Below, piece by piece: positions 53,984 to 63,400 of a stretch of 64,000 bases of DNA. Made by a program: the position numbers and the translations under genes. The stretch is from Haliotis rubra. Taxonomy: Eukaryota. The notes under the pieces are model-generated. The model made no database searches, was not told where the DNA came from, and saw nothing but the letters and a program-made list of their open reading frames with translations. How positions within the stretch are numbered: position 1 is the first letter of the stretch; each line of letters opens with the position of its first letter. Location of the stretch: assembly GCF_003918875.1 (NCBI RefSeq), contig NW_025767730.1, positions 186,001 to 250,000 on the forward strand. The letters run 5' to 3'.

Positions 53984-55445
53984 CTGGTGTTTAGTGACTT
54001 ACGTTCAGACGTTCATGTTTTGTAGGAGAGATGTTTATCCTGCAGTTTCACATCACGTGGGGCACTATGAACACCTGTATTTTCTATATTACACTACCCC
54101 CTTGTACCACGTGTGAATGGCTGCGTTAGGTTACTATATGGTCTTCACATGGAAACTGAACAGAACAAAACTGCTGTATCAATAGATTGATGTATTGTGA
54201 AATATGCGGATCGGTGGTGTAAAAGAATGTTATTGCCAAGTGTTTAGTACAGTCCTCTATTTACATTCCATATTCAAACAAAATCATTAATGGCATATGT
54301 GACAAACGCTTGAGTGTTTTGTCAAAGGCGCCGCCCGTTCAAAGTAAAATTGTTTGGACAAGGCGTTATTGTATTATACTGTAATGTTTGATATAAACTA
54401 AAATATAACGCGCCAGACCTTAGTGTGGTGGACGAGGCTCACGTGGGCGATGACTATTTATTCAGTGAGCGACGCGGCATACATTCAAGGGAGATCACTC
54501 CGACAGCCGTATCTAGGTCAACACGACATGGCTCATGATACTGTCATTACAACTACTTCAGACTCAGCACTGCCTTTGAGTTATCGATGAGTTATTTTTC
54601 CTTATCTGAGTGCTTGAACATTTCGACTGTGTAAGCGGTTAGTATTGATCAAAGTAATGCAGGTTTTATCAAATTTTAACACGTGGGTAAAATCCACATA
54701 GAATCAGTGAAAGGGAATTTGGGATTCGAACCAGTGATCATATGATTCCGGCACTCGAAGACCCTGTCTTAAAGTCGTTTTCTCGAATACTGAGCAAATT
54801 TATAGCGGATCCACCCCCACTATTCCTCTGTAGCTTGGAGATACGAATTTGCATATTTTCACCCTAGGTTCTACACATGCATGGTGTTCTGAAACGGCCA
54901 GTGCACAATTAAGTGATGAATGTAACATATACTCTTAAACACATTGCTTAGAGTTTCTTTACTTTCAAATGAACTAGACTTTAGCTTGAAAAGAGCCCAC
55001 TATAACGGTGTTTGAAATAGGGGATTATTTTAGTTGTCTTATTTAAAACGTGTGGCTGAGGCATTCTCCAACTACAGAAAGACTTGCGGGGTCATTTGAT
55101 TCTTTAAAAGTTCGCTGTCTTTCATTGGTGAACCAGCGTGGCAGTATTGAATCTGATGAGTTCTTTTGTGGTCACCCCGGGTACTGAACAGGGACCAACA
55201 GTTTTTAATGAAATAGGCCAAATGACGCACTTGACGTGTGTGTTATTGGGCCACCACAACCTTGTGTATTGTTCATGGTATAAATCGATGCATTGACAGA
55301 CCGCCACGATAAAGTTGGAATCTTTCTGAGTGCGGCACAAAACAACATATTCACATCACCCCAACTCAACAATGTGTATGCCTCAACAGCGTATAGTGAG
55401 CATGGTTTTACACAGCTTTTAGAAAAATCCCAGCAATTCCACACC

Positions 55446-55550
55446 TGGGGACACTAGAAATGGCCTTCACACACTGAAGATGTGGGAATCGAATTCGGTA
55501 GTTTAGCGTGACGAGTGAACACTTTAATCATCATTCTAACTCACCGCCTC
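55446..55550 (-). mobile_element. tRNA-derived SINE, family A, degenerate
   Basis: gggacactagaaatggccttcacacac...gtgggaatcgaa...caccgcctc is the reverse complement of the family head and core. Confidence 0.65.
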
Positions 55551-55791
55551 CGCGTGCTTGGTTGTGTGAGGGTAACCAATTATATCACAAAACAGCTTTC
55601 TTTATATATAATATTTTATTGATCCCGTTAATATTCATTGTTATGTAAACTGTCAGACTGCCCTCTACTGAGTGTTCCAGGTGGGGTGGCGAAGTCACTG
55701 ACTTCCAAATGAAACAGAGATGGCTGGAGAAACCTTGGTCAGTTTTAAACAATACTGTAACTGTTCTATCACAATAAACGTCATTGATCCC

Positions 55792-58700
55792 CTAGTTTTT
55801 GTTGAACTGATACTTGCCGGATCTGAATAGCCACTTTGGTCTCCTAAAAAAATTCTTCTTTGATTTAGTCTCAATTGTTTGTTGCGGGAACATTTTGATT
55901 GACATCTCTACCCGTGGTGACCTCAACGCCGGCGTCTTCTGTGTCACACGACGTGGTTGTGGAGGCGGACTGTCCGGAGTGTCTGGAATTATTGATTGAA
56001 CAAGTACGTCACAAGCTTGATATGGTGGTGTCTAATGAAGCTGGACAATCTATATTGGATTTGTGTTGATCCATTTGTGGACATAGATGATGCAACTAAA
56101 CATTATGTCAAGGGCGTCGTGTACAGTAGAGGGCGTTGACCAAAGAGCAGAGAGCATATAAGTGCGAAAGGGCACGGGACCCTATTCCCCTATAGGATCT
56201 TTGCGCCCAAAGTGTAATAAAATCCCTTGCTTCAACACTGACATACCGCAGTCGTAGTTCGTTTGGTCGAACAGAACTGTGAAACCACCTCCACAGTGAG
56301 AGCACAGTAGGAGCACCATAGCCTTTCCATGTGAATGGTTATGGGCGAAGAGGAGTATTTAAAACGGCGACACAAGCGTTCTCCACACGGATAAAGTGTA
56401 ATACCTGCTTCACGCCCATTCTTGTTGTCGAATAACGCCTCTGAACTTCTTATTAATGGTGTAAATTTATCTCACCTTGAAAACGCCCTGGGTGCCCTCT
56501 GGTTATGACTTCAGCAATGTGACCTTGGTCAGACCTCCTGAGTGCCCGGATGAGGATGTCAACAGCAGTTGGCCCAAATATGGGCAGTAGGTCGAGGAGC
56601 CTGAGCACCTGGTCGGAGACGGACTTCGTGTCCAAGATGTAGTGGACGACTGTTGATGACAGGAGGCCTGAGTCCCGCAGGTAGATGAGAACTAGAGACA
56701 CCAGCAGGTGCTCCACCAGGATCGGATAGCTTGCCTCCACTATAGCCCGGTCTGCAGTCGGCAGCACCTCCACTACAAACACAAGAAGAAGTCAGTAGTG
56801 GGGCACAGTATCACATTTGTCGCTTGGGATGTGGTAGTGAGTGAGTAAATGGAATGAAACAGATTCTGGTCCAGGCTCACCGACCGACCAACTGTGGTAC
56901 AATGATCCATGTCGCCTGAGTACGGTGACTGTATGAGACAGGTTATACATTTTGGTCCTCAGTTTAGGTAAGCATTGAGTAATTGGGATAAAAGTAGACT
57001 TGCACAAGTCTCTAAGGTAACAATTAATAGTTTAAATGATAATTTCCTCAAAAATACAAAATAACAGACTGTACACTTATCTGGACTTGCCTCTTCGAAG
57101 GATAGAATTACTATACACTCATGCGCTCAGCATTCAGTACAGCCTTGGAGCAAGGCTAGAATGAATGTTATGTTATGTGATGGTTGTTTCAGCATTGCTT
57201 TTGGAAGAATGAAGTAAAATCTTATGTCAGCTGGGTAAGCAGCATAAGGAAGTTCAGCAAAATCTATACTGAGAATTCTATATTAGCAATTCTCCGTTAG
57301 ACCTATCATCAGATGTCGAATGGTGGCTTTCAGTATGTAGCGACGGTTATATGTTGGTCCAGTCGTCTATCATACGGGACCTCAACGTGGCCCTGCATCG
57401 TGAGTTCCAATCCCGCATTGATTATGTTTTTTATTTTGTAAATACCAAACCCGCGTTCGTGGGTTTAACAAGGCGTGAAACTTGCATCACTTTGGGTTAT
57501 CCAGCATATCAGGCTAAAAGGCTTTAGCCTTTCATAAACGATGTGTTGGTCCTGAGTATTTCTGAATTTAGGAACATTTGCTCATATCTAGGCTAGCAGT
57601 AGTAGATGTAGGAGAAACGAACGCCGATCTCAGACGTCAGCCTAGTAATGCCATGTCCACAACGCCTGTTTAAGCGAACACCTCTTACATTAATCAACAC
57701 AACTACTTACCTCCTAGAGGGTTGTGCAGCTGGCAATCTACACACGCCTGCACGAGTTGTCCCAACATGGTGGAGCGTCTGCCGTCCACGGTGTTGCTGT
57801 TCCACTCACTGATGACCGACCAGAACAAACCGCTGAAGTCTTCATAGAAATCCAGGTCTTCCCGTAGTCGTGTGAGCGTCTCATGGTTGGGCACGAGGCA
57901 CTGCGAGAACTCCCACACTCGGTCATCTGAAATATGGACAAGTTGAATTAAGCAACACTAACGTCCCCTTCAAGTAGCCCTATCCTTCTGTCAAATCACT
58001 CCTTACGATCAAACACTAAATGACCTATCGGTCCCTTAAGCGAAATACGCATTATGTCGGAAGGTGCACGTTAAATCTCAAAATAATAAAATTAATCATC
58101 ATCATCATCATCATCATCAAGTAACAAAGTGCTTGTCGCAAGAGGCAACGAACGGAATAGGGTGGTCAGATTCACTGACCCAGCGTTAACCCAAATGGGT
58201 AGATTGTCTTCATTGAATACAGACTGCATTCATATGGTTTGAATATTGACGATTAAGGCGTTTAACAACAAAGAAAACAAAATGTGGTAGGGATCTGTAA
58301 ACTGATCTTGAACACTGACAATGCACATATGCGCTACGTACATGAATGTACAACCATGAATCGGAGAATTCATTAGGATGTCATAACTGCACAGTTTTAT
58401 TTGTCAAATCACTGTTGTCACCAACATATCGTTACAGCTATGACCCATGTATGCTTTGTCTGCTTTGAAGTACTGAGAGTGGTTGGGCTGGTTCGGGTTT
58501 GTTTTCAGGACTTTCTCGTACCAAGGAAAGGTTGTAGGTTACAGCAAAATCCCCGGATGTGTGAAGGCAGTGATTTGTCTTTTGTGTCACGCAGAGGGCA
58601 CTGCGAGCTGATTTCGTTAAAGTGTTGAATCCTTTTGTTCACATCCGAGATCGTCTTGTTGGCCAGAACGATGTCTTCCCTGTAGCTGCAGATCTAAACA

Positions 58701-60443
58701 GGTATAGATAGAGTTGTTAACGCAATGATAAAAATGATATAAGGAAATATCAGTAAAAACAGCATCTAACCCTCTTAGCCACGTGAGCTGTGCTAATTTA
58801 CAGAGGGGTACACGAAGTACGTGATTTAGATTATCAGTTGTCGGACTTTTTGTGGAAAGTAGTAAACAGTTATACTTCACTATGAAAGTGTGGTCTCAAA
58901 TATAACATAACAACTTTGTAAAAGGCAATGCTGCAGTATTAAAGTGATGGTGACATTAGCAGTACTGCAGAGAAAGAGATTTCGTTAAGTAGTACTGCAG
59001 TGTAAATAATATTATGAGCAGTACTGCAGAATAAAGAGTGATATAGAATATAGAGTGATGTACACAATATCAACATCTCTTATCATGTTTCATGCTTTTA
59101 AGTGATATTTTATTAAATGTGCGTGGTAGTTGAATTAAGTAGAAAGTAGATGAATTTTGAAAGAGCTTGTATCCAGTAAATGTCAAAATAAAATAACCTC
59201 TTTGGCCAACATATTTGCCAGTTTATCCCTCTGTTGTTCGGTCTCGCGATATCTCGCGACAGGCATTTCTTTTGGTGACAGTTCACCGAATCCGGCATCC
59301 ACGTGACCGGCCCTGCTGGAGTTGCCGAACACGTCATCGTCCTGTAATAAGCAAGCACATGTTCTCAGTTCGATCGGTTTAATGTTGTCACTACGACAAT
59401 TTGTCGGCTTACTGACAAGGCACGGCAAAATAATTGTAAATAACATGTAAAGAACTCTACCACTTGAAGCCTGACCACATTTGAAGTAAATGCAGGCTGG
59501 CCTCGCGGATCCAGGTTCAAGAAACGGTCTCACATTAGTGAGACTTTTCCTACTGGTGTACAGTGAAGGTGCAGTGGGTAAACTCCACACAAATACTGTT
59601 GAGATCAGCGTTAACGCCACGCCCACTCACTAAATCACCAAATCTATTTGTGTCTAGTTATATAGGTCATTGGAAACCAACGCCACAAGCATAACAAAAG
59701 CATACACTTTACAATAAAACATTAACGTGACAGCACCAGAAAGTCAGTAGATCAGGGTTCGATTACCAACATAGGTACAATGTGAGGCCCACTTTTGGTG
59801 TTCCCCGTCGTGATATTGCTGGAATATTGCTAAAAGCGGCGTAAAACTAAACTCACTCATTTGTCTCGCTATTACAATGTGCGGTTATTATCACCTACTA
59901 GAGGCTGTGTAAGGAACTGTTTACTACTGTGACACTCCCCCATCAGAATATACAACTACAGTCGGTTCAAACCTGCTCTGTGTCTGAGTCGATGTCTCCA
60001 ACGGACAATGACGTTGACGGGAAGGTTGTAGCCGCGTAGTCAACTGCTAGTAGTTGACTGCAGCTCTTGGATTTGGTCCTGAACTCTGGCGGTGGTGGCA
60101 GGACAGGAGCCTCTGCGACACTGTTCAACCTCGACGTCCGCCCACACCGTACCTCATTCAGTTCATACTCAAGCTGAGAGATAGTATCTCTGTATTCTCT
60201 TTCCTTCAGTTTCACCAGTGCAAGTTCATTCTCGAGGGAGACAACTCTGTTTTCCGCCTCCATCCTGGCCCACTGCTCTTGTGCCATCTGTGTCTCGAGC
60301 TGCCCCATCCGACCACCTCCAGTTCCTGACTCACTAGGCGGAACTACTATTCCGTTTCTGAAACTACCGTTAAACATTTTCTTGTCAGTCACCGTGTTAC
60401 TGTCGTACGCTTGGATGCCGTGACTGTATTCTGGTTGATACAT
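55792..60443 (-). CDS. Uncharacterised ~496-aa protein: N-terminal coiled coil, death-domain-like region, CARD-like domain, basic tail
   Basis: Six coding exons 60443-59973, 59341-59198, 58693-58522, 57926-57711, 56772-56476, 55982-55792. All GT-AG, phases 0,0,1,1,1, total 1491 nt with no internal stop. CARD-like pattern DRAIVEASYPILVEHL..VLIYL..GLL..I..SVSDQVLRLLDLLPIFGPTAVDILIRALRRSDQGHIAEVI. Upstream UTR acceptor at 60575 and candidate donor near 61812. Confidence 0.8.
59745..59860 (+). mobile_element. tRNA-derived SINE, family A, 5'-degenerate
   Basis: gggttcgatt..acataggtacaatgtgaggccc..gtgatattgctggaatattgctaaaagcggcgtaaaactaaactcactca. Confidence 0.8.
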
Positions 60444-63400
60444 GGCCGCACCTCGTTTGTCTTACTCAATCCTGGTGTTCAAAAACTTCTGGCTTTCACA
60501 GTTCATTTCCCCTGACCAAAGTTTCACCACAACGAGAGTATTGCCGGAATGCACCAGTCAAACCTTTATCTGCATCTGTAAACAGGGTTTACATTATACA
60601 CACACTAAAAACACAAACAAACAGCTGACGAGCTCAGAGTAACATCCTTATGGAGCTACAACATGAACGCAATTCACTGTCATGTAATATCAAGTGATAC
60701 TCAATTTCAGCCCTCAGACATATTCCGGATGTTTGACAGTGACCAGTGACCTGACCGAATCTGAACCAGACAATCCAGTGATTGATATTATGAACATCGC
60801 ACCACTCATAGCATAGGTAACTGGGAACCCATTCCAAGAAGGCGCATCAACTGGCACGCAAAATAACACATACACTCGCAAAGTGGATATGCCCGAAAGC
60901 ATTTACAAAATATTGCAAACTTCATTAAAATGTTACCAGGCTAAAACAGTTTCCGAAACACTGGAAACTTGAAGTCCGAAACACAGAAGGATCGAATTCA
61001 TCAGTTCGAATAATTACTCGTTTGTTTCCTATAACCAAACATTAAACCAGAGTGTTTTGTTCGGCAGTTTATGTACACGCTGAAGGAAAAGACGTGATAT
61101 AATTTGTTGTTATAGTCCGAATTAGTAGATATATATTCATGTATGCCGTTCCTTGGCTTTACTCTCATTTTACACACGTAGCCGATGCTAATTCCGATTC
61201 TAATTAGTGACTGTATAGTGATAGGGTGTATGTTCTTACCGCTGGATTTGAATGCATGTCACAGTGGTACCAAGGCATCCCTATAAACTGTAGAGTTCTA
61301 GTCCGGACCAACATCGTACATAACTCTCTTTACTGCAGCAATTCTTGAAACGCTTATTCAATGCGTTTGTTACATGCTTGTACAAGACTCAGTCCCACCC
61401 ATACAGGACGTACCGCTACCCGCTTAACTGAGCCGGTGATGTCTGTCATCTCACGCCGGGACAGCTGTAGCTGCGAGGCTGACATTCCGGGTGACATATA
61501 TTGATTTTTCCAACTGCGGTTATTGATCTTTAACAACAACATTCGTCTTGTCAAATGTGTTGACACGCATGGATAGCCGTGTTTGAAATAGCGATTATAA
61601 CATCTAAATGGTGATGAACTCACGATAAGGGTATATTCATGAAAGTGTAACTACACATATAGATCGAATATACGTCACTAATGGCGAGATCTGGTTGGAT
61701 GCTGGCAGGTATACCCTTTCAGCAAAAACATGTGTGCTGCCGAGAAGCATTTGTGAAATTAAACCTGATCTCTACTTATCTTCCTAACTCATCTTCACTA
61801 TCAACAACTTACCTCATGAATAGGAATACCTATCCGGAATAGGAACACATGCAGGGGGAGATAACTGCTCTTGTTTACAAGATCGTGATAGGTCTGTCAT
61901 CCATCCATCTTGTTTTCTATCACAGTTTAACCGAGTTAATCAATATTCATGAGGTTCTTGGCAGTTCGTCAAAGCTGACTGCTTAAACATGTGCGTTGTA
62001 GTTTGACGCTGTAGATGCTGGCCCGGCTTAACAGGCCGACGGCTGTCTCGCATCGGTGGACAATCAATTTGTCTTTATATGTGATCAATAGGTTCCTGTT
62101 CTCAGTTGAAGTATTCGATCTGCTTAGAAGGCTGGAGGTAAAGGCATGATGAAACTTATCAGAGTATGGAGACAGGGATGACTGTAAAATGTAACTCCCA
62201 TGTTCACATGGTGCATTCTGGTTTGAACAATGGATTCCACAGAGGTATGCATAGACTTTGTTGGAAACGTATGTGGACCTGCCTACTCATCTATACCATA
62301 TTCGTACAGAATCTTGTATAAACAAATTTTACTTGTTTCAGTATTTATTGTGTTAAACGGGACGTGTGGGTACTAGATACTGCAGTTCGGTGTGCAGAGT
62401 TACCTCCCATTGGTGTTCGAGAAACTGGTGATCGTGGTTCGAAAACGTCCCTGATTATGACACTTGTTTTGTCATACGTCCTGGGGTTGTGAAACATCTG
62501 GCTATTCACCCACACGTAGCTCACATGTAATTAAGATCCTCTTCCAAGCCGCCTTCCTTCATACCCACTAACTCAATCTCGATTCATAAACCTTTAACTG
62601 GAACCTGTGTCTTAGGCAGTGGCAAAACTACATATAGGCAATAAACAACTTCGTGCACACAATGATTTTATTTGCCAATCGTGACCATTCATCGGCCCGA
62701 CCTTTGTCAAAGGAAAAGCAATATTGGAGAAACGCTAAGCTTCCGATAAAAAACAGCGAAAACTATGCGACGGTAAAGTTCGGGCCGAGATGAGAAGCAC
62801 ACCCAGAAATACAGAGGTGTTTAAGGTAAACACGATGTGTGCTTCTTTACTCGACAGTCCATTTCCGCCACTTTGCATGGCATGTGTATATTACACAGAA
62901 GAGTTTCTACAGTTTTGAATCGGAGTTGTGACTTGTATTCAAGGTTAGGCTCTACAAGAATATAGACTTTTCACACTTTGAAAAGGATCAAATCGTGGAT
63001 TCAATAGAAAACTATGATGTGGGGTCAAATTTGGTTTAAATATCTAAGCTTATTGTAGCGTGGTTTCTAGGTTTCAGTATGTCATTGCATCTTGTGGATC
63101 CCATACCTGCTATTGACAAGTGGTGTTTATTTGTCAATGACTCGTTTCATGATTTCCAAAATGGTTGATTGGTGCCATGAAAACCATTTTTATGGTTACT
63201 CATGTATCAAGTGCATAAAGTTAAAATAAAGTCGCTGTCTGCCTAAAGAGGGATTACGACATATTATTTATCCAGTCTTAAATGGATACAATTTCGTATT
63301 ACAAATCTACATTTAAGTAAAGTTGTGAATTTTTATGATCCTTATCAAAGTGTGAGTAGTATATTTGAGTCTACTATCACAACATATACTGGATGATACG

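What the first reader, a model, noticed from the sequence alone, without database searches (positions are those of the whole stretch)
55792..60443. Unnamed coiled-coil + death-domain-like + CARD adaptor gene hidden across six short exons
Seen: six exons splice in phase into an intact ~496-aa ORF that the ORF track shows only as fragments. Exon 56772-56476 has a clear CARD-type pattern (LLDLLP.FGP.A...L..AL....QGHIA). Exons 58693-58522 and 57926-57711 carry a weaker death-domain-like pattern (VWEFSQCL...LFWSVISEW....STMLGQLVQAC). Exon 1 has heptads (LETQMAQEQWARMEAENRVVSLENELALVKLKEREYRDTISQLEYEL). Established: dual death-fold adaptors such as CRADD/RAIDD (CARD then DD) and FADD (DED then DD) bridge receptors to caspases. 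Inference: this DD-then-CARD order with an N-terminal coiled coil and no catalytic domain matches no adaptor I recognise. It may be a lineage-specific immune or apoptosis scaffold.
Basis: partly seen in the sequence, partly recalled or inferred. Interest (0 to 1): 0.75.

Follow-up and report, generated by a model that had tools for sequence, protein, structure and literature searches.

The report
Abalone coiled-coil, death-domain, CARD adaptor gene
This is a real, transcribed six-exon abalone gene, already in RefSeq as an uncharacterised protein, whose product joins a dimerising coiled coil, a divergent death domain, a CARD and a basic tail in an order no studied cell-death or immune adaptor has, so it is a modestly new variant of a familiar kind of signalling scaffold.

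Summary
Six minus-strand exons (60443-55792) with GT..AG borders splice in phase into 496 codons. A spliced RNA-derived contig joins exons 2 to 6 at exactly the predicted borders. The product is identical to RefSeq XP_046556329.1, "uncharacterized protein LOC124265586" of Haliotis rubra, so the gene is annotated, not hidden.

- **CARD:** exon 5 passes Pfam's cut-off (36.1 bits against 23.9). Its nearest solved relatives are the RAIDD, CED-3 and caspase-9 CARDs.
- **Death domain:** exons 3-4 fail Pfam Death. They do align with Pfam-valid death domains that sit before homologous CARDs in Lingula proteins (hhalign 79.5%). Their AlphaFold model matches FADD, RIPK1, PIDD and TNFR1 death domains best (Z 10.1 to 7.5).
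- **Other parts:** two long helices (45-99 and 184-235) are predicted to form a parallel dimer. The last 30 residues are a basic, aromatic tail conserved across the Haliotis members.
- **Relatives:** Haliotis has three paralogues, one of them fused to a probable pseudokinase. Relatives occur in Gigantopelta and Lingula.

Most likely it is an oligomerising, membrane-proximal bridge between a death-domain partner and CARD effectors. Function is untested.

An earlier scan note on other DNA of this genome flagged a different family of CARD genes.

The parts
59973..60443 (-). Exon 1, coding residues 1-157: a disordered N-terminus followed by coiled coil 1
   Evidence: ATG at 60443 with an in-frame TAA 21 nt upstream, and a GT donor at 59972-59971. 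The translation equals P0001 residues 1-157. RNA contigs of run X1 cover 59972-60518.
60147..60311 (-). Coiled coil 1, residues 45-99
   Evidence: AlphaFold helix 45-99 with pLDDT 63-88. Heptad-like segment 45-112. In the dimer model the contacts follow a 3-4 spacing and pair residue i with residue i, that is, parallel and in register.
59198..59341 (-). Exon 2, residues 158-205: the end of a disordered linker and the start of helix 2
   Evidence: AG acceptor and GT donor. Equals P0001 residues 158-205. The X1 contig joins 59198 to 58693.
58522..58693 (-). Exon 3, residues 206-263: the rest of helix 2 (184-235) and the first death-domain helix, with the conserved LPxHIRGF motif at 247-254
   Evidence: Splice sites. 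Junctions 59198|58693 and 58522|57926 are in the X1 contig. L247, P248, I251 and F254 are invariant across the family. Helices 184-235 and 249-261.
57711..57926 (-). Exon 4, residues 263-335: death-domain helices 2 to 5
   Evidence: Helices 263-273, 277-286, 293-308 and 313-326. W298, L320 and A323 are invariant, including in the Lingula death domains. Structural matches to FADD, RIPK1, PIDD and TNFR1 death domains, Z 10.1 to 7.5. hhalign 79.5% to the Lingula death domains.
56476..56772 (-). Exon 5, residues 335-434: the CARD (helices 340-426)
   Evidence: Pfam PF00619, E 6.8e-09, 36.1 bits against a cut-off of 23.9. Six predicted helices, pLDDT 83-90. The family profile hits RAIDD CARD at 5.1e-08 and CED-3 at 8.6e-08. 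Junctions 57711|56772 and 56476|55982 are in the X1 contig.
55792..55982 (-). Exon 6, coding part, residues 434-496 plus the stop: a proline-rich linker and the basic, aromatic C-terminal tail. The 3' UTR runs on past 55700.
   Evidence: AG acceptor at 55984-55983 and TAG at 55794-55792. Equals P0001 residues 435-496. The X1 contig continues to 55700 and beyond.
55795..55875 (-). Basic, aromatic tail, residues 470-496 (KSKKNFFRRPKWLFRSGKYQFNKN)
   Evidence: The last 40 residues carry net charge +9 and 7 aromatic residues. All Haliotis family members have tails of the same kind, with net charge +6 to +10 and 4 to 7 aromatics. AlphaFold predicts the tail as disordered.

Best explanation
The locus is LOC124265586 of the blacklip abalone Haliotis rubra, a transcribed six-exon gene for a 496-residue non-catalytic adaptor. 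Shown here: two long helices (45-99 and 184-235), a divergent five-helix death domain (about 247-326), a canonical six-helix CARD (340-426) and a disordered proline-rich linker that ends in a strongly basic, aromatic tail. Inferred: the helices pair two or more chains in parallel, which holds the DD-CARD units close together. The death domain docks onto a DD-bearing upstream protein, such as a receptor tail, a FADD-, MyD88- or IRAK-like protein, or a paralogue. The clustered CARDs, which resemble those of RAIDD, CED-3 and caspase-9, seed assembly of a CARD-bearing effector. The most plausible effector is a CARD caspase (mollusc caspase-2 or caspase-Y), or one of the many CARD proteins of this genome. 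The basic, aromatic tail would hold the complex at an acidic membrane surface. In short, it would work like CRADD/RAIDD or ASC, as a two-death-fold bridge, but with reversed domain order, built-in oligomerisation and a membrane tether. The confidence figure covers the whole statement. The gene and its domain anatomy I rate at about 0.9, the proposed mechanism at about 0.4.
For: - **Gene model:** splice sites and reading frame; a spliced RNA contig joining exons 2 to 6; identity with RefSeq protein P0001.
- **CARD:** above Pfam's cut-off. The family CARD profile hits RAIDD at 5.1e-08, CED-3 at 8.6e-08, caspase-9 at 2.5e-05 and BCL10 at 1e-3.
- **Death domain, by sequence:** it aligns with Pfam-valid Death domains that directly precede homologous CARDs in P0007. 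hhalign gives 79.5% probability, E 1.5e-05, over 73 columns.
- **Death domain, by structure:** the AlphaFold model has pLDDT 78.5 and pTM 0.72. Foldseek's top eight hits are all death domains, though weak, at E 1.6 to 8.6. An independent all-against-48,161 search gives FADD DD Z 10.1 (rmsd 2.8, 86 aligned) and Z 9.8 (rmsd 1.9, 79 aligned). RIPK1 DD scores 8.7, PIDD DD 8.5, ankyrin-G DD 8.1 and TNFR1 DD 7.5. CARDs follow at 6.0-6.8 and DED/PYD at 5.2-5.8.
- **Independent full-length model:** built without any Lingula rows, it gives the same helices.
- **Dimer test on residues 40-240, two copies:** score 0.49, best of 3 controls 0.00. That mark was reached by 21 of 30 proteins solved as pairs of one chain and by 0 of 23 solved as single chains. 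On eukaryotes it was reached by 17 of 29 (animals 7 of 16), but by only 1 of the 7 with no older solved relative. The runs agree in at least 74% of contacts, and the partner's pLDDT is at least 56.
- **Conservation:** orthologues in H. rufescens and H. asinina are 90-93% identical over the full length. Two paralogues in the same genome keep the same order and tail.
- **Membrane link:** the Gigantopelta relative P0008 ends in a hydrophobic 19-mer (mean Kyte-Doolittle hydropathy 2.03) where Haliotis has the basic tail. Both suit membrane attachment.
- **Background:** molluscs have lost APAF-1 and keep CARD caspases (PMC11463336).
Against: - No binding partner, localisation or expression response was tested, so the mechanism is inference from domain types.
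- Pfam Death does not detect the death domain, either in exon 4 alone (E up to 10) or in the whole protein (E up to 0.1). A profile search of PDB sequences gave only spurious weak hits.
- The model shows five helices, not six. VIA Z values of 8 to 10 lie in the range that helical bundles can reach by common arrangement.
- Two of the ten rows of the alignment used for that model were true death domains, which could bias it.
- The tail is predicted as disordered. It could equally be a calmodulin-binding site or a nuclear-import signal.
- The genome holds at least 150 CARD loci, so the downstream partner is wide open.
- The dimer score comes from a model that may recognise generic coiled coils.
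Confidence: 0.6

Rival explanations
1. It is the divergent MAVS-type antiviral adaptor that abalone are reported to lack. In this reading it is a membrane-tethered CARD plus DD platform that RIG-I-like receptors, or another sensor, nucleate.
For: Searches for MAVS in five abalone proteomes found nothing, and the authors leave open a highly divergent homologue (PMC11103948). Oyster MAVS is CARD + Death + TM (PMC5557890), the same domain types. The Gigantopelta relative P0008 is DD-like + CARD + a C-terminal hydrophobic anchor, and the Haliotis members carry a basic, aromatic tail that could replace that anchor. P0008 reaches the cut-off of CARD_2, a second Pfam CARD model, at 28.7 bits against 28.2.
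Against: The domain order is the reverse of oyster MAVS, and P0001 has no transmembrane segment. The family CARD profile finds RAIDD, CED-3, caspase-9 and BCL10, but no MAVS, RIG-I or MDA5 CARD, at E up to 1. The paper reports that the H. rubra RLR lacks CARDs altogether, so there would be no CARD sensor to receive from. P0001 itself hits only PF00619.
Confidence: 0.1
2. It is a CARD9/CARMA- or BCL10-like NF-kB signalosome scaffold. Coiled-coil oligomers would nucleate a BCL10-type CARD filament rather than a caspase.
For: It combines a coiled coil with a CARD. BCL10 CARDs are hit at E 1e-3 by the family profile. The nearest ESM-Atlas clusters are CARD9-like, but with scores of 0.75-0.78, which is lead level only.
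Against: CARD9 and the CARMA proteins have the CARD at the N-terminus followed by the coiled coil, whereas here the order is reversed with a death domain between. The RAIDD and CED-3 CARDs score four to five orders of magnitude better than BCL10. Atlas scores under 0.8 are reached by shuffled proteins a third of the time.
Confidence: 0.15
3. It is a decoy or brake, not an activator. In this reading, a non-catalytic DD-CARD protein caps or sequesters death-fold assemblies, as CARD-only proteins and ARC do.
For: It has no catalytic or effector domain. One paralogue carries what looks like a pseudokinase (NFH in place of DFG, and no glycine loop, in P0003), which suits regulatory scaffolds. The very large CARD repertoire would plausibly need regulators.
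Against: Built-in dimerisation and two different death-fold domains are features of bridging adaptors rather than cappers. Nothing tested here separates activation from inhibition.
Confidence: 0.1

Closest known systems
CRADD/RAIDD (the caspase-2 adaptor of the PIDDosome)
   Same: It has one CARD and one death domain and no catalytic domain. The RAIDD CARD is the best solved-structure sequence match of this CARD, at E 0.004 for the single sequence and 5.1e-08 for the family profile. The RAIDD and PIDD death domains are among the structural matches.
   Different: The order is reversed, DD then CARD instead of CARD then DD. This protein is about 2.5 times longer, with two N-terminal coiled-coil helices, a disordered linker and a basic C-terminal tail. 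Its death domain is too divergent for Pfam.
PYCARD/ASC
   Same: Both place an N-terminal death-fold domain before a C-terminal CARD, and both act as bridging adaptors that polymerise.
   Different: The first domain here matches DDs (Z 10.1 to 7.5) better than PYDs (Z 5.3 to 5.4). ASC has no coiled coil and no basic tail. PYCARD was not found in lophotrochozoans (PMC11463336).
Mollusc MAVS (Crassostrea gigas CgMAVS: CARD + Death + TM)
   Same: It has the same two death-fold types plus a C-terminal membrane-attachment element. That element is a hydrophobic anchor in the Gigantopelta relative and a basic, aromatic tail in Haliotis.
   Different: The order is reversed, P0001 has no TM segment, it has extra coiled coils, and its CARD is not MAVS/RLR-like by sequence.
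Lingula anatina DD-CARD proteins (P0007, P0019 and P0020 from MetaClust, likely Lingula; P0021 = LOC106152482)
   Same: A death domain directly precedes a CARD. P0007 also has long coiled coils before each DD-CARD unit. Its CARD is hit at E 4.1e-08 by exon 5, and the DD profiles match at 79.5%.
   Different: Their death domains pass Pfam. P0007 has two units and no basic tail, and P0021 adds a ZU5 domain. All are uncharacterised.
CARD9 / CARMA (CARD11, CARD10, CARD14)
   Same: A CARD combined with an oligomerising coiled coil.
   Different: There the CARD is N-terminal with the coiled coil after it, and there is no death domain.

Membership tests
CARD (Pfam PF00619) | Sequence score above the curated gathering cut-off of 23.9 bits | tested here: met
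   36.1 bits, E 6.8e-09, for exon 5 alone. 31.9 bits for the whole protein.
CARD (Pfam PF00619) | Six-helix death-fold bundle | tested here: met
   AlphaFold helices 340-356, 359-368, 374-381, 386-395, 397-414 and 418-426, with pLDDT 83-90.
Death domain (Pfam PF00531) | Sequence score above the curated cut-off of 22.6 bits | tested here: not met
   No Death hit for exon 4 at E up to 10, nor for P0001 at E up to 0.1. The PDB profile search gave no DD.
Death domain (Pfam PF00531) | Homology to accepted death domains | tested here: inconclusive
   hhalign of the gastropod profile against Pfam-valid Lingula DDs gives probability 79.5%, E 1.5e-05, over 73 columns. Against a single DD it gives 44%. 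The equivalent position, directly before homologous CARDs, supports homology.
Death domain (Pfam PF00531) | Death fold, with the DD subfamily as the closest structures | tested here: met
   The top seven of 48,161 representatives are DDs, at Z 10.1 to 7.0. CARD, DED and PYD rank below, and nearly all 50 rows are death-fold proteins. Foldseek's top hits are also DDs, but at E 1.6 to 9. Only five helices are predicted.
CRADD/RAIDD orthologue | An N-terminal CARD followed by a C-terminal DD, about 200 aa, with nothing else | tested here: not met
   The order is DD (247-326) then CARD (340-426). The protein has 496 aa, with coiled coils and a tail.
MAVS (mollusc type) | N-terminal CARD, a C-terminal transmembrane anchor, and a CARD of the RLR/MAVS type | tested here: not met
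   The CARD is C-terminal. The most hydrophobic 19-mer (1.77) lies inside the CARD, and the tail is basic. No MAVS or RLR CARD appears among the PDB hits at E up to 1.
CARD9/CARMA | An N-terminal CARD directly followed by a coiled coil | tested here: not met
   The coiled coils lie at 45-99 and 184-235, N-terminal to the DD and the CARD.
PYCARD/ASC | An N-terminal pyrin domain | tested here: not met
   PYD structures score Z 5.3 to 5.4, against 10.1 to 7.5 for DDs. There is no Pfam PYD hit.
Any death-fold bridging adaptor (functional class) | Homotypic binding of each death-fold domain to a distinct partner | not testable with these tools
   No partner is known. It needs pull-downs or two-hybrid tests with abalone CARD and DD proteins.

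The most novel reading that the evidence does not exclude
The family is a lophotrochozoan invention that fills a gap left by lost platforms. On this reading it is a self-oligomerising, membrane-tethered DD-CARD hub, with a pseudokinase-bearing sister. In abalone it would stand in for the missing MAVS and/or the lost APAF-1 apoptosome as the platform that activates CARD caspases or antiviral signalling. That would overturn the view that CRADD is the only CARD activator in molluscs.
Probability: 0.12. Interest if true: 0.75.

Novelty: new variant of a known kind. Interest (0 to 1): 0.42.

Why it matters
Death-fold adaptors decide how animal cells turn a danger signal into caspase activation or NF-kB and interferon-type signalling. 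Molluscs are reported to have lost APAF-1 and to lack PIDD, PYCARD and TRADD (PMC11463336). Abalone are reported to lack MAVS (PMC11103948). How their CARD caspases and antiviral pathways are switched on is therefore open, and it matters for farmed abalone that die of herpesvirus and Vibrio disease. A conserved, expressed coiled-coil, DD, CARD and basic-tail family, with a pseudokinase paralogue and relatives in a deep-sea snail and a brachiopod, gives a concrete candidate to test. The caveat is that domain shuffling among death-fold proteins is common in invertebrates, and this genome alone has at least 150 CARD loci. The architecture is new in detail but not surprising in kind.

Tried and rejected
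- **Joined model:** I searched the exons one by one by reference. The exon-5 search returned the database protein P0001, which I then used.
- **Pfam Death:** no hit on exon 4 alone or on full-length P0001.
- **PDB sequence searches for the DD-like part:** only spurious weak hits, namely calpain-8, norovirus capsid, ankyrin-repeat proteins and SMC6.
- **Word-index homologue search with residues 206-340:** it found only P0001 itself and the H. rufescens orthologue.
- **ESM-Atlas feature search:** only generic CARD and CARD9 clusters, at 0.75 to 0.78, below the level that means anything.
- **The look-up of encoding contigs for P0007:** nothing on record. I inferred its Lingula origin from the 73%-identical P0021.
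- **Rfam and tRNA scans of 55000-61500:** nothing, so the high-copy intron repeat stays unidentified.
- **Literature search for 'DD-CARD':** the only biological hit, on Biomphalaria AIG genes, uses the term for a CARD-type death fold, not a DD plus CARD tandem.
- **MAVS-substitute idea:** considered and ranked low, because the CARD profile finds apoptotic CARDs and no MAVS or RLR CARD.
- **Sequencing runs X5 to X7:** they cover introns, so they are genomic DNA and say nothing about expression. Only X1 gave RNA evidence. Run metadata are coded, so tissue and infection state could not be read.
Full report

The minus strand of window 55700-60520 shows six exons:
- E1 60443-59973
- E2 59341-59198
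- E3 58693-58522
- E4 57926-57711
- E5 56772-56476
- E6 55982-55792

Each intron begins with GT and ends with AG. The phases fit: 0, 0, then 1 carried through E3 to E6. The exons total 1491 nt, which is 496 codons plus TAG. An in-frame TAA lies 21 nt upstream of the ATG.

Laying public runs on the stretch gave one decisive record. A 1125-nt contig of run X1 lies on five pieces with nothing between them: 59198-59295, 58522-58693, 57711-57926, 56476-56772 and 55700-55982. It is therefore a spliced, RNA-derived contig, and it confirms four of the five junctions to the base. It also shows that the 3' UTR runs past 55700. Another X1 contig ends at 59972 with 44 unplaced letters. That is what an E1-E2 junction would give, because exon 2 starts with the same G, but the tool did not list the joint. 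Runs X5 to X7 cover introns and are genomic DNA.

I searched them one by one by reference.

**2. The gene is already annotated**

An exhaustive HMMER search of 1.84 billion representative proteins with exon 5 returned a 496-residue protein, P0001, 100% identical over residues 336-433. All six exon translations are exact, consecutive substrings of it. The three split codons read as the DNA predicts.

P0001 is XP_046556329.1, "uncharacterized protein LOC124265586 [Haliotis rubra]". So the window comes from the blacklip abalone. The model is not hidden from RefSeq, but nothing is known about the protein.

**3. Domains**

*CARD.* Exon 5 alone hits PF00619 at E 6.8e-09 and 36.1 bits, against a cut-off of 23.9. 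The best solved-structure sequence match is the RAIDD CARD. A profile of eight family CARDs (A4) finds the following:
- RAIDD, 5.1e-08
- CED-3, 8.6e-08
- caspase-9, 2.5e-05
- BCL10, about 1e-3
- CED-4, cIAP1 and NOD1, more weakly
- no MAVS, RIG-I or MDA5 CARD at E up to 1

*Death domain.* Pfam Death does not see it, either in exon 4 alone or in the full protein. PDB sequence searches gave only noise.

The first line is sequence homology. The relative P0007 is built of two units of coiled coil, Pfam Death (2.6e-11) and CARD. Its death domains align column for column with residues 247-335 of P0001. The alignment shares an invariant Trp (W298) and the L..A of helix 5. Profile-profile comparison of the gastropod segment (A2) with four Pfam-valid DDs of that group (A6) gives 79.5% probability and E 1.5e-05 over 73 columns. 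Against one DD alone it gave 44%.

The second line is structure. AlphaFold on residues 232-338 gave pLDDT 78.5 and pTM 0.72.
- Foldseek's top eight PDB hits are all death domains (FADD, PIDD/RAIDD, TNFR1, Fas, RAIDD), but weak, at E 1.6 to 8.6 and TM 0.45-0.62.
- The Foldseek-independent search of 48,161 representatives put seven death domains first: FADD at Z 10.1 and 9.8, RIPK1 8.7, PIDD 8.5, ankyrin-G 8.1, TNFR1 7.5 and p84 7.0.
- CARDs followed at 6.0-6.8, and DEDs and PYDs at 5.2-5.8. Nearly all 50 rows are death-fold proteins.

The caveats are these. Z of 8 to 10 is not far above what helical bundles can reach. Two of the ten alignment rows were true DDs. Only five helices are predicted. 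Against the second caveat, the full-length model was built without the Lingula rows and gives the same five helices, at pLDDT 74-86.

*Coiled coil.* The full-length model has long helices at 45-99 and 184-235, separated by a disordered stretch. A crude heptad score marks 45-112 and 185-237. I folded two copies of residues 40-240 against controls.
- The score was 0.49, and the best of 3 controls scored 0.00.
- The mark was reached by 21 of 30 proteins solved as pairs of one chain and by 0 of 23 solved as single chains.
- On eukaryotes it was reached by 17 of 29 (animals 7 of 16), but by only 1 of the 7 with no older solved relative.
- The runs agree in at least 74% of contacts, and the partner's pLDDT is at least 56.
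- The contacts follow a 3-4 spacing and pair residue i with residue i, which means a parallel, in-register dimer.

This supports binding but does not show it.

*Tail.* Residues 434-496 are predicted as disordered. They are proline-rich and end in KSKKNFFRRPKWLFRSGKYQFNKN. The last 40 residues of every Haliotis family member carry net charge +6 to +10 and 4 to 7 aromatic residues. The Gigantopelta relative P0008 instead ends in a 19-residue hydrophobic segment (mean hydropathy 2.03), like a tail anchor. I read both as membrane-attachment devices. The resemblance of the basic tail to the MARCKS effector domain is from memory and is only a lead. Calmodulin binding or nuclear import are alternatives.

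**4. Family and distribution**

Only 15 proteins in the representative library reach E 1e-3 with the CARD exon.

Within the H. rubra genome there are two paralogues with the same DD-like and CARD exons, both 46% identical.
- One is a tandem copy about 9 kb away on the same strand, with its own coiled-coil exon and basic tail. Its orthologues are P0004 and P0017 in H. asinina and P0002 in H. cracherodii.
- The other lies on contig C2566. Its H. asinina orthologue P0003 (801 aa) carries a tyrosine-kinase-like domain after the CARD. That domain scores PF07714 2.5e-51, is nearest ABL/SRC, and again ends in a basic tail.

Direct orthologues of P0001 exist in H. rufescens (P0018) and H. asinina (P0016). 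They are 90% and 93% identical over the full length.

More distant members:
- Gigantopelta aegis P0008 and P0011 share the invariant LPxHIRGF motif that opens the DD.
- The Lingula anatina group carries the DD-CARD tandem behind coiled coils (P0007) or beside a ZU5 domain (P0021, LOC106152482).

Exon 1 has no paralogue in the genome.

**5. How it probably works**

The anatomy is that of a bridging death-fold adaptor with built-in oligomerisation. My best reading has four steps, all inferred:
- The coiled coils hold two or more DD-CARD units together.
- The DD engages a DD-bearing upstream protein.
- The clustered RAIDD/CED-3/caspase-9-like CARDs nucleate a CARD effector. The most plausible is a CARD caspase. 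Molluscs have caspase-2 and caspase-Y but have lost APAF-1, and CRADD has been proposed as their only CARD activator (PMC11463336).
- The tail keeps the assembly at a membrane.

The rivals:
- **MAVS substitute.** It is attractive because abalone are reported to lack MAVS (PMC11103948) and oyster MAVS is CARD + DD + TM (PMC5557890). The reversed order, the missing TM segment and the apoptotic-type CARD weigh against it.
- **CARD9/BCL10-style NF-kB scaffold.**
- **Inhibitory decoy.**

Nothing tested here separates activation from inhibition.

**6. Comparison and novelty**

The protein works like CRADD or ASC, but it is a member of neither. The order is DD then CARD. The first domain is DD-type, not PYD. 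There are coiled coils and a tail.

I found no characterised protein with this architecture in Pfam, the PDB or the literature searched. Shuffling of death-fold domains is well known in invertebrates, and this genome alone has at least 150 CARD loci above Pfam's cut-off. I therefore class it as a new variant of a known kind, of moderate interest. Its value is as a concrete candidate for the unexplained activation of CARD caspases or antiviral signalling in abalone.

Noticed in passing
G000:C2566:473600-478000+ (L013 5674-9412); H. asinina orthologue P0003: A third paralogue continues after the CARD into a tyrosine-kinase-like domain (PF07714 2.5e-51, nearest ABL/SRC). In P0003 the DFG motif reads NFH, HRD reads HGD and the glycine loop is missing, so it looks like a pseudokinase. 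A coiled-coil, DD, CARD and pseudokinase order is unusual.
   Followed up: partly
G000:C2840:255421-258142, minus strand (L012 5421-8142), about 9 kb beyond the window's end: A tandem paralogue on the same strand has its own coiled-coil exon, DD-like exons, and the CARD and basic tail in a single exon. It has no intron where this gene has intron 5.
   Followed up: partly
whole genome G000: At least 150 loci (352 first-look candidates) encode a CARD above Pfam's cut-off. Many sit in single open frames of about 264-275 aa, which points to a very large CARD expansion in Haliotis rubra. An earlier scan note (s1-322344) describes one such cluster.
   Followed up: partly
window 59725-59885 (intron 1) and 56988-57309 (intron 4): Two stretches collect huge summed contig depth in the DNA runs, up to millions, with many contigs breaking at 59804-59862 and at 56995-57159. 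They are high-copy interspersed repeats. No Rfam or tRNA match was found.
   Followed up: partly
window 58092-58120 (intron 3): A (GAT)n microsatellite, read as a run of Asp or His codons in the ORF list.
   Followed up: no
P0021 (Lingula anatina LOC106152482): A CARD (preceded by a DD-like segment) sits N-terminal to a ZU5 domain. This recalls the ZU5-UPA-DD and FIIND-CARD proteins, but in a different order.
   Followed up: no
P0001 residues 463-469 (window about 55876-55896): The segment FPQQTIE fits the short PxQxT pattern of TRAF2/3-binding motifs (recalled from memory). It is conserved in the H. rufescens and H. asinina orthologues but absent from the paralogues, and could be chance.
   Followed up: no
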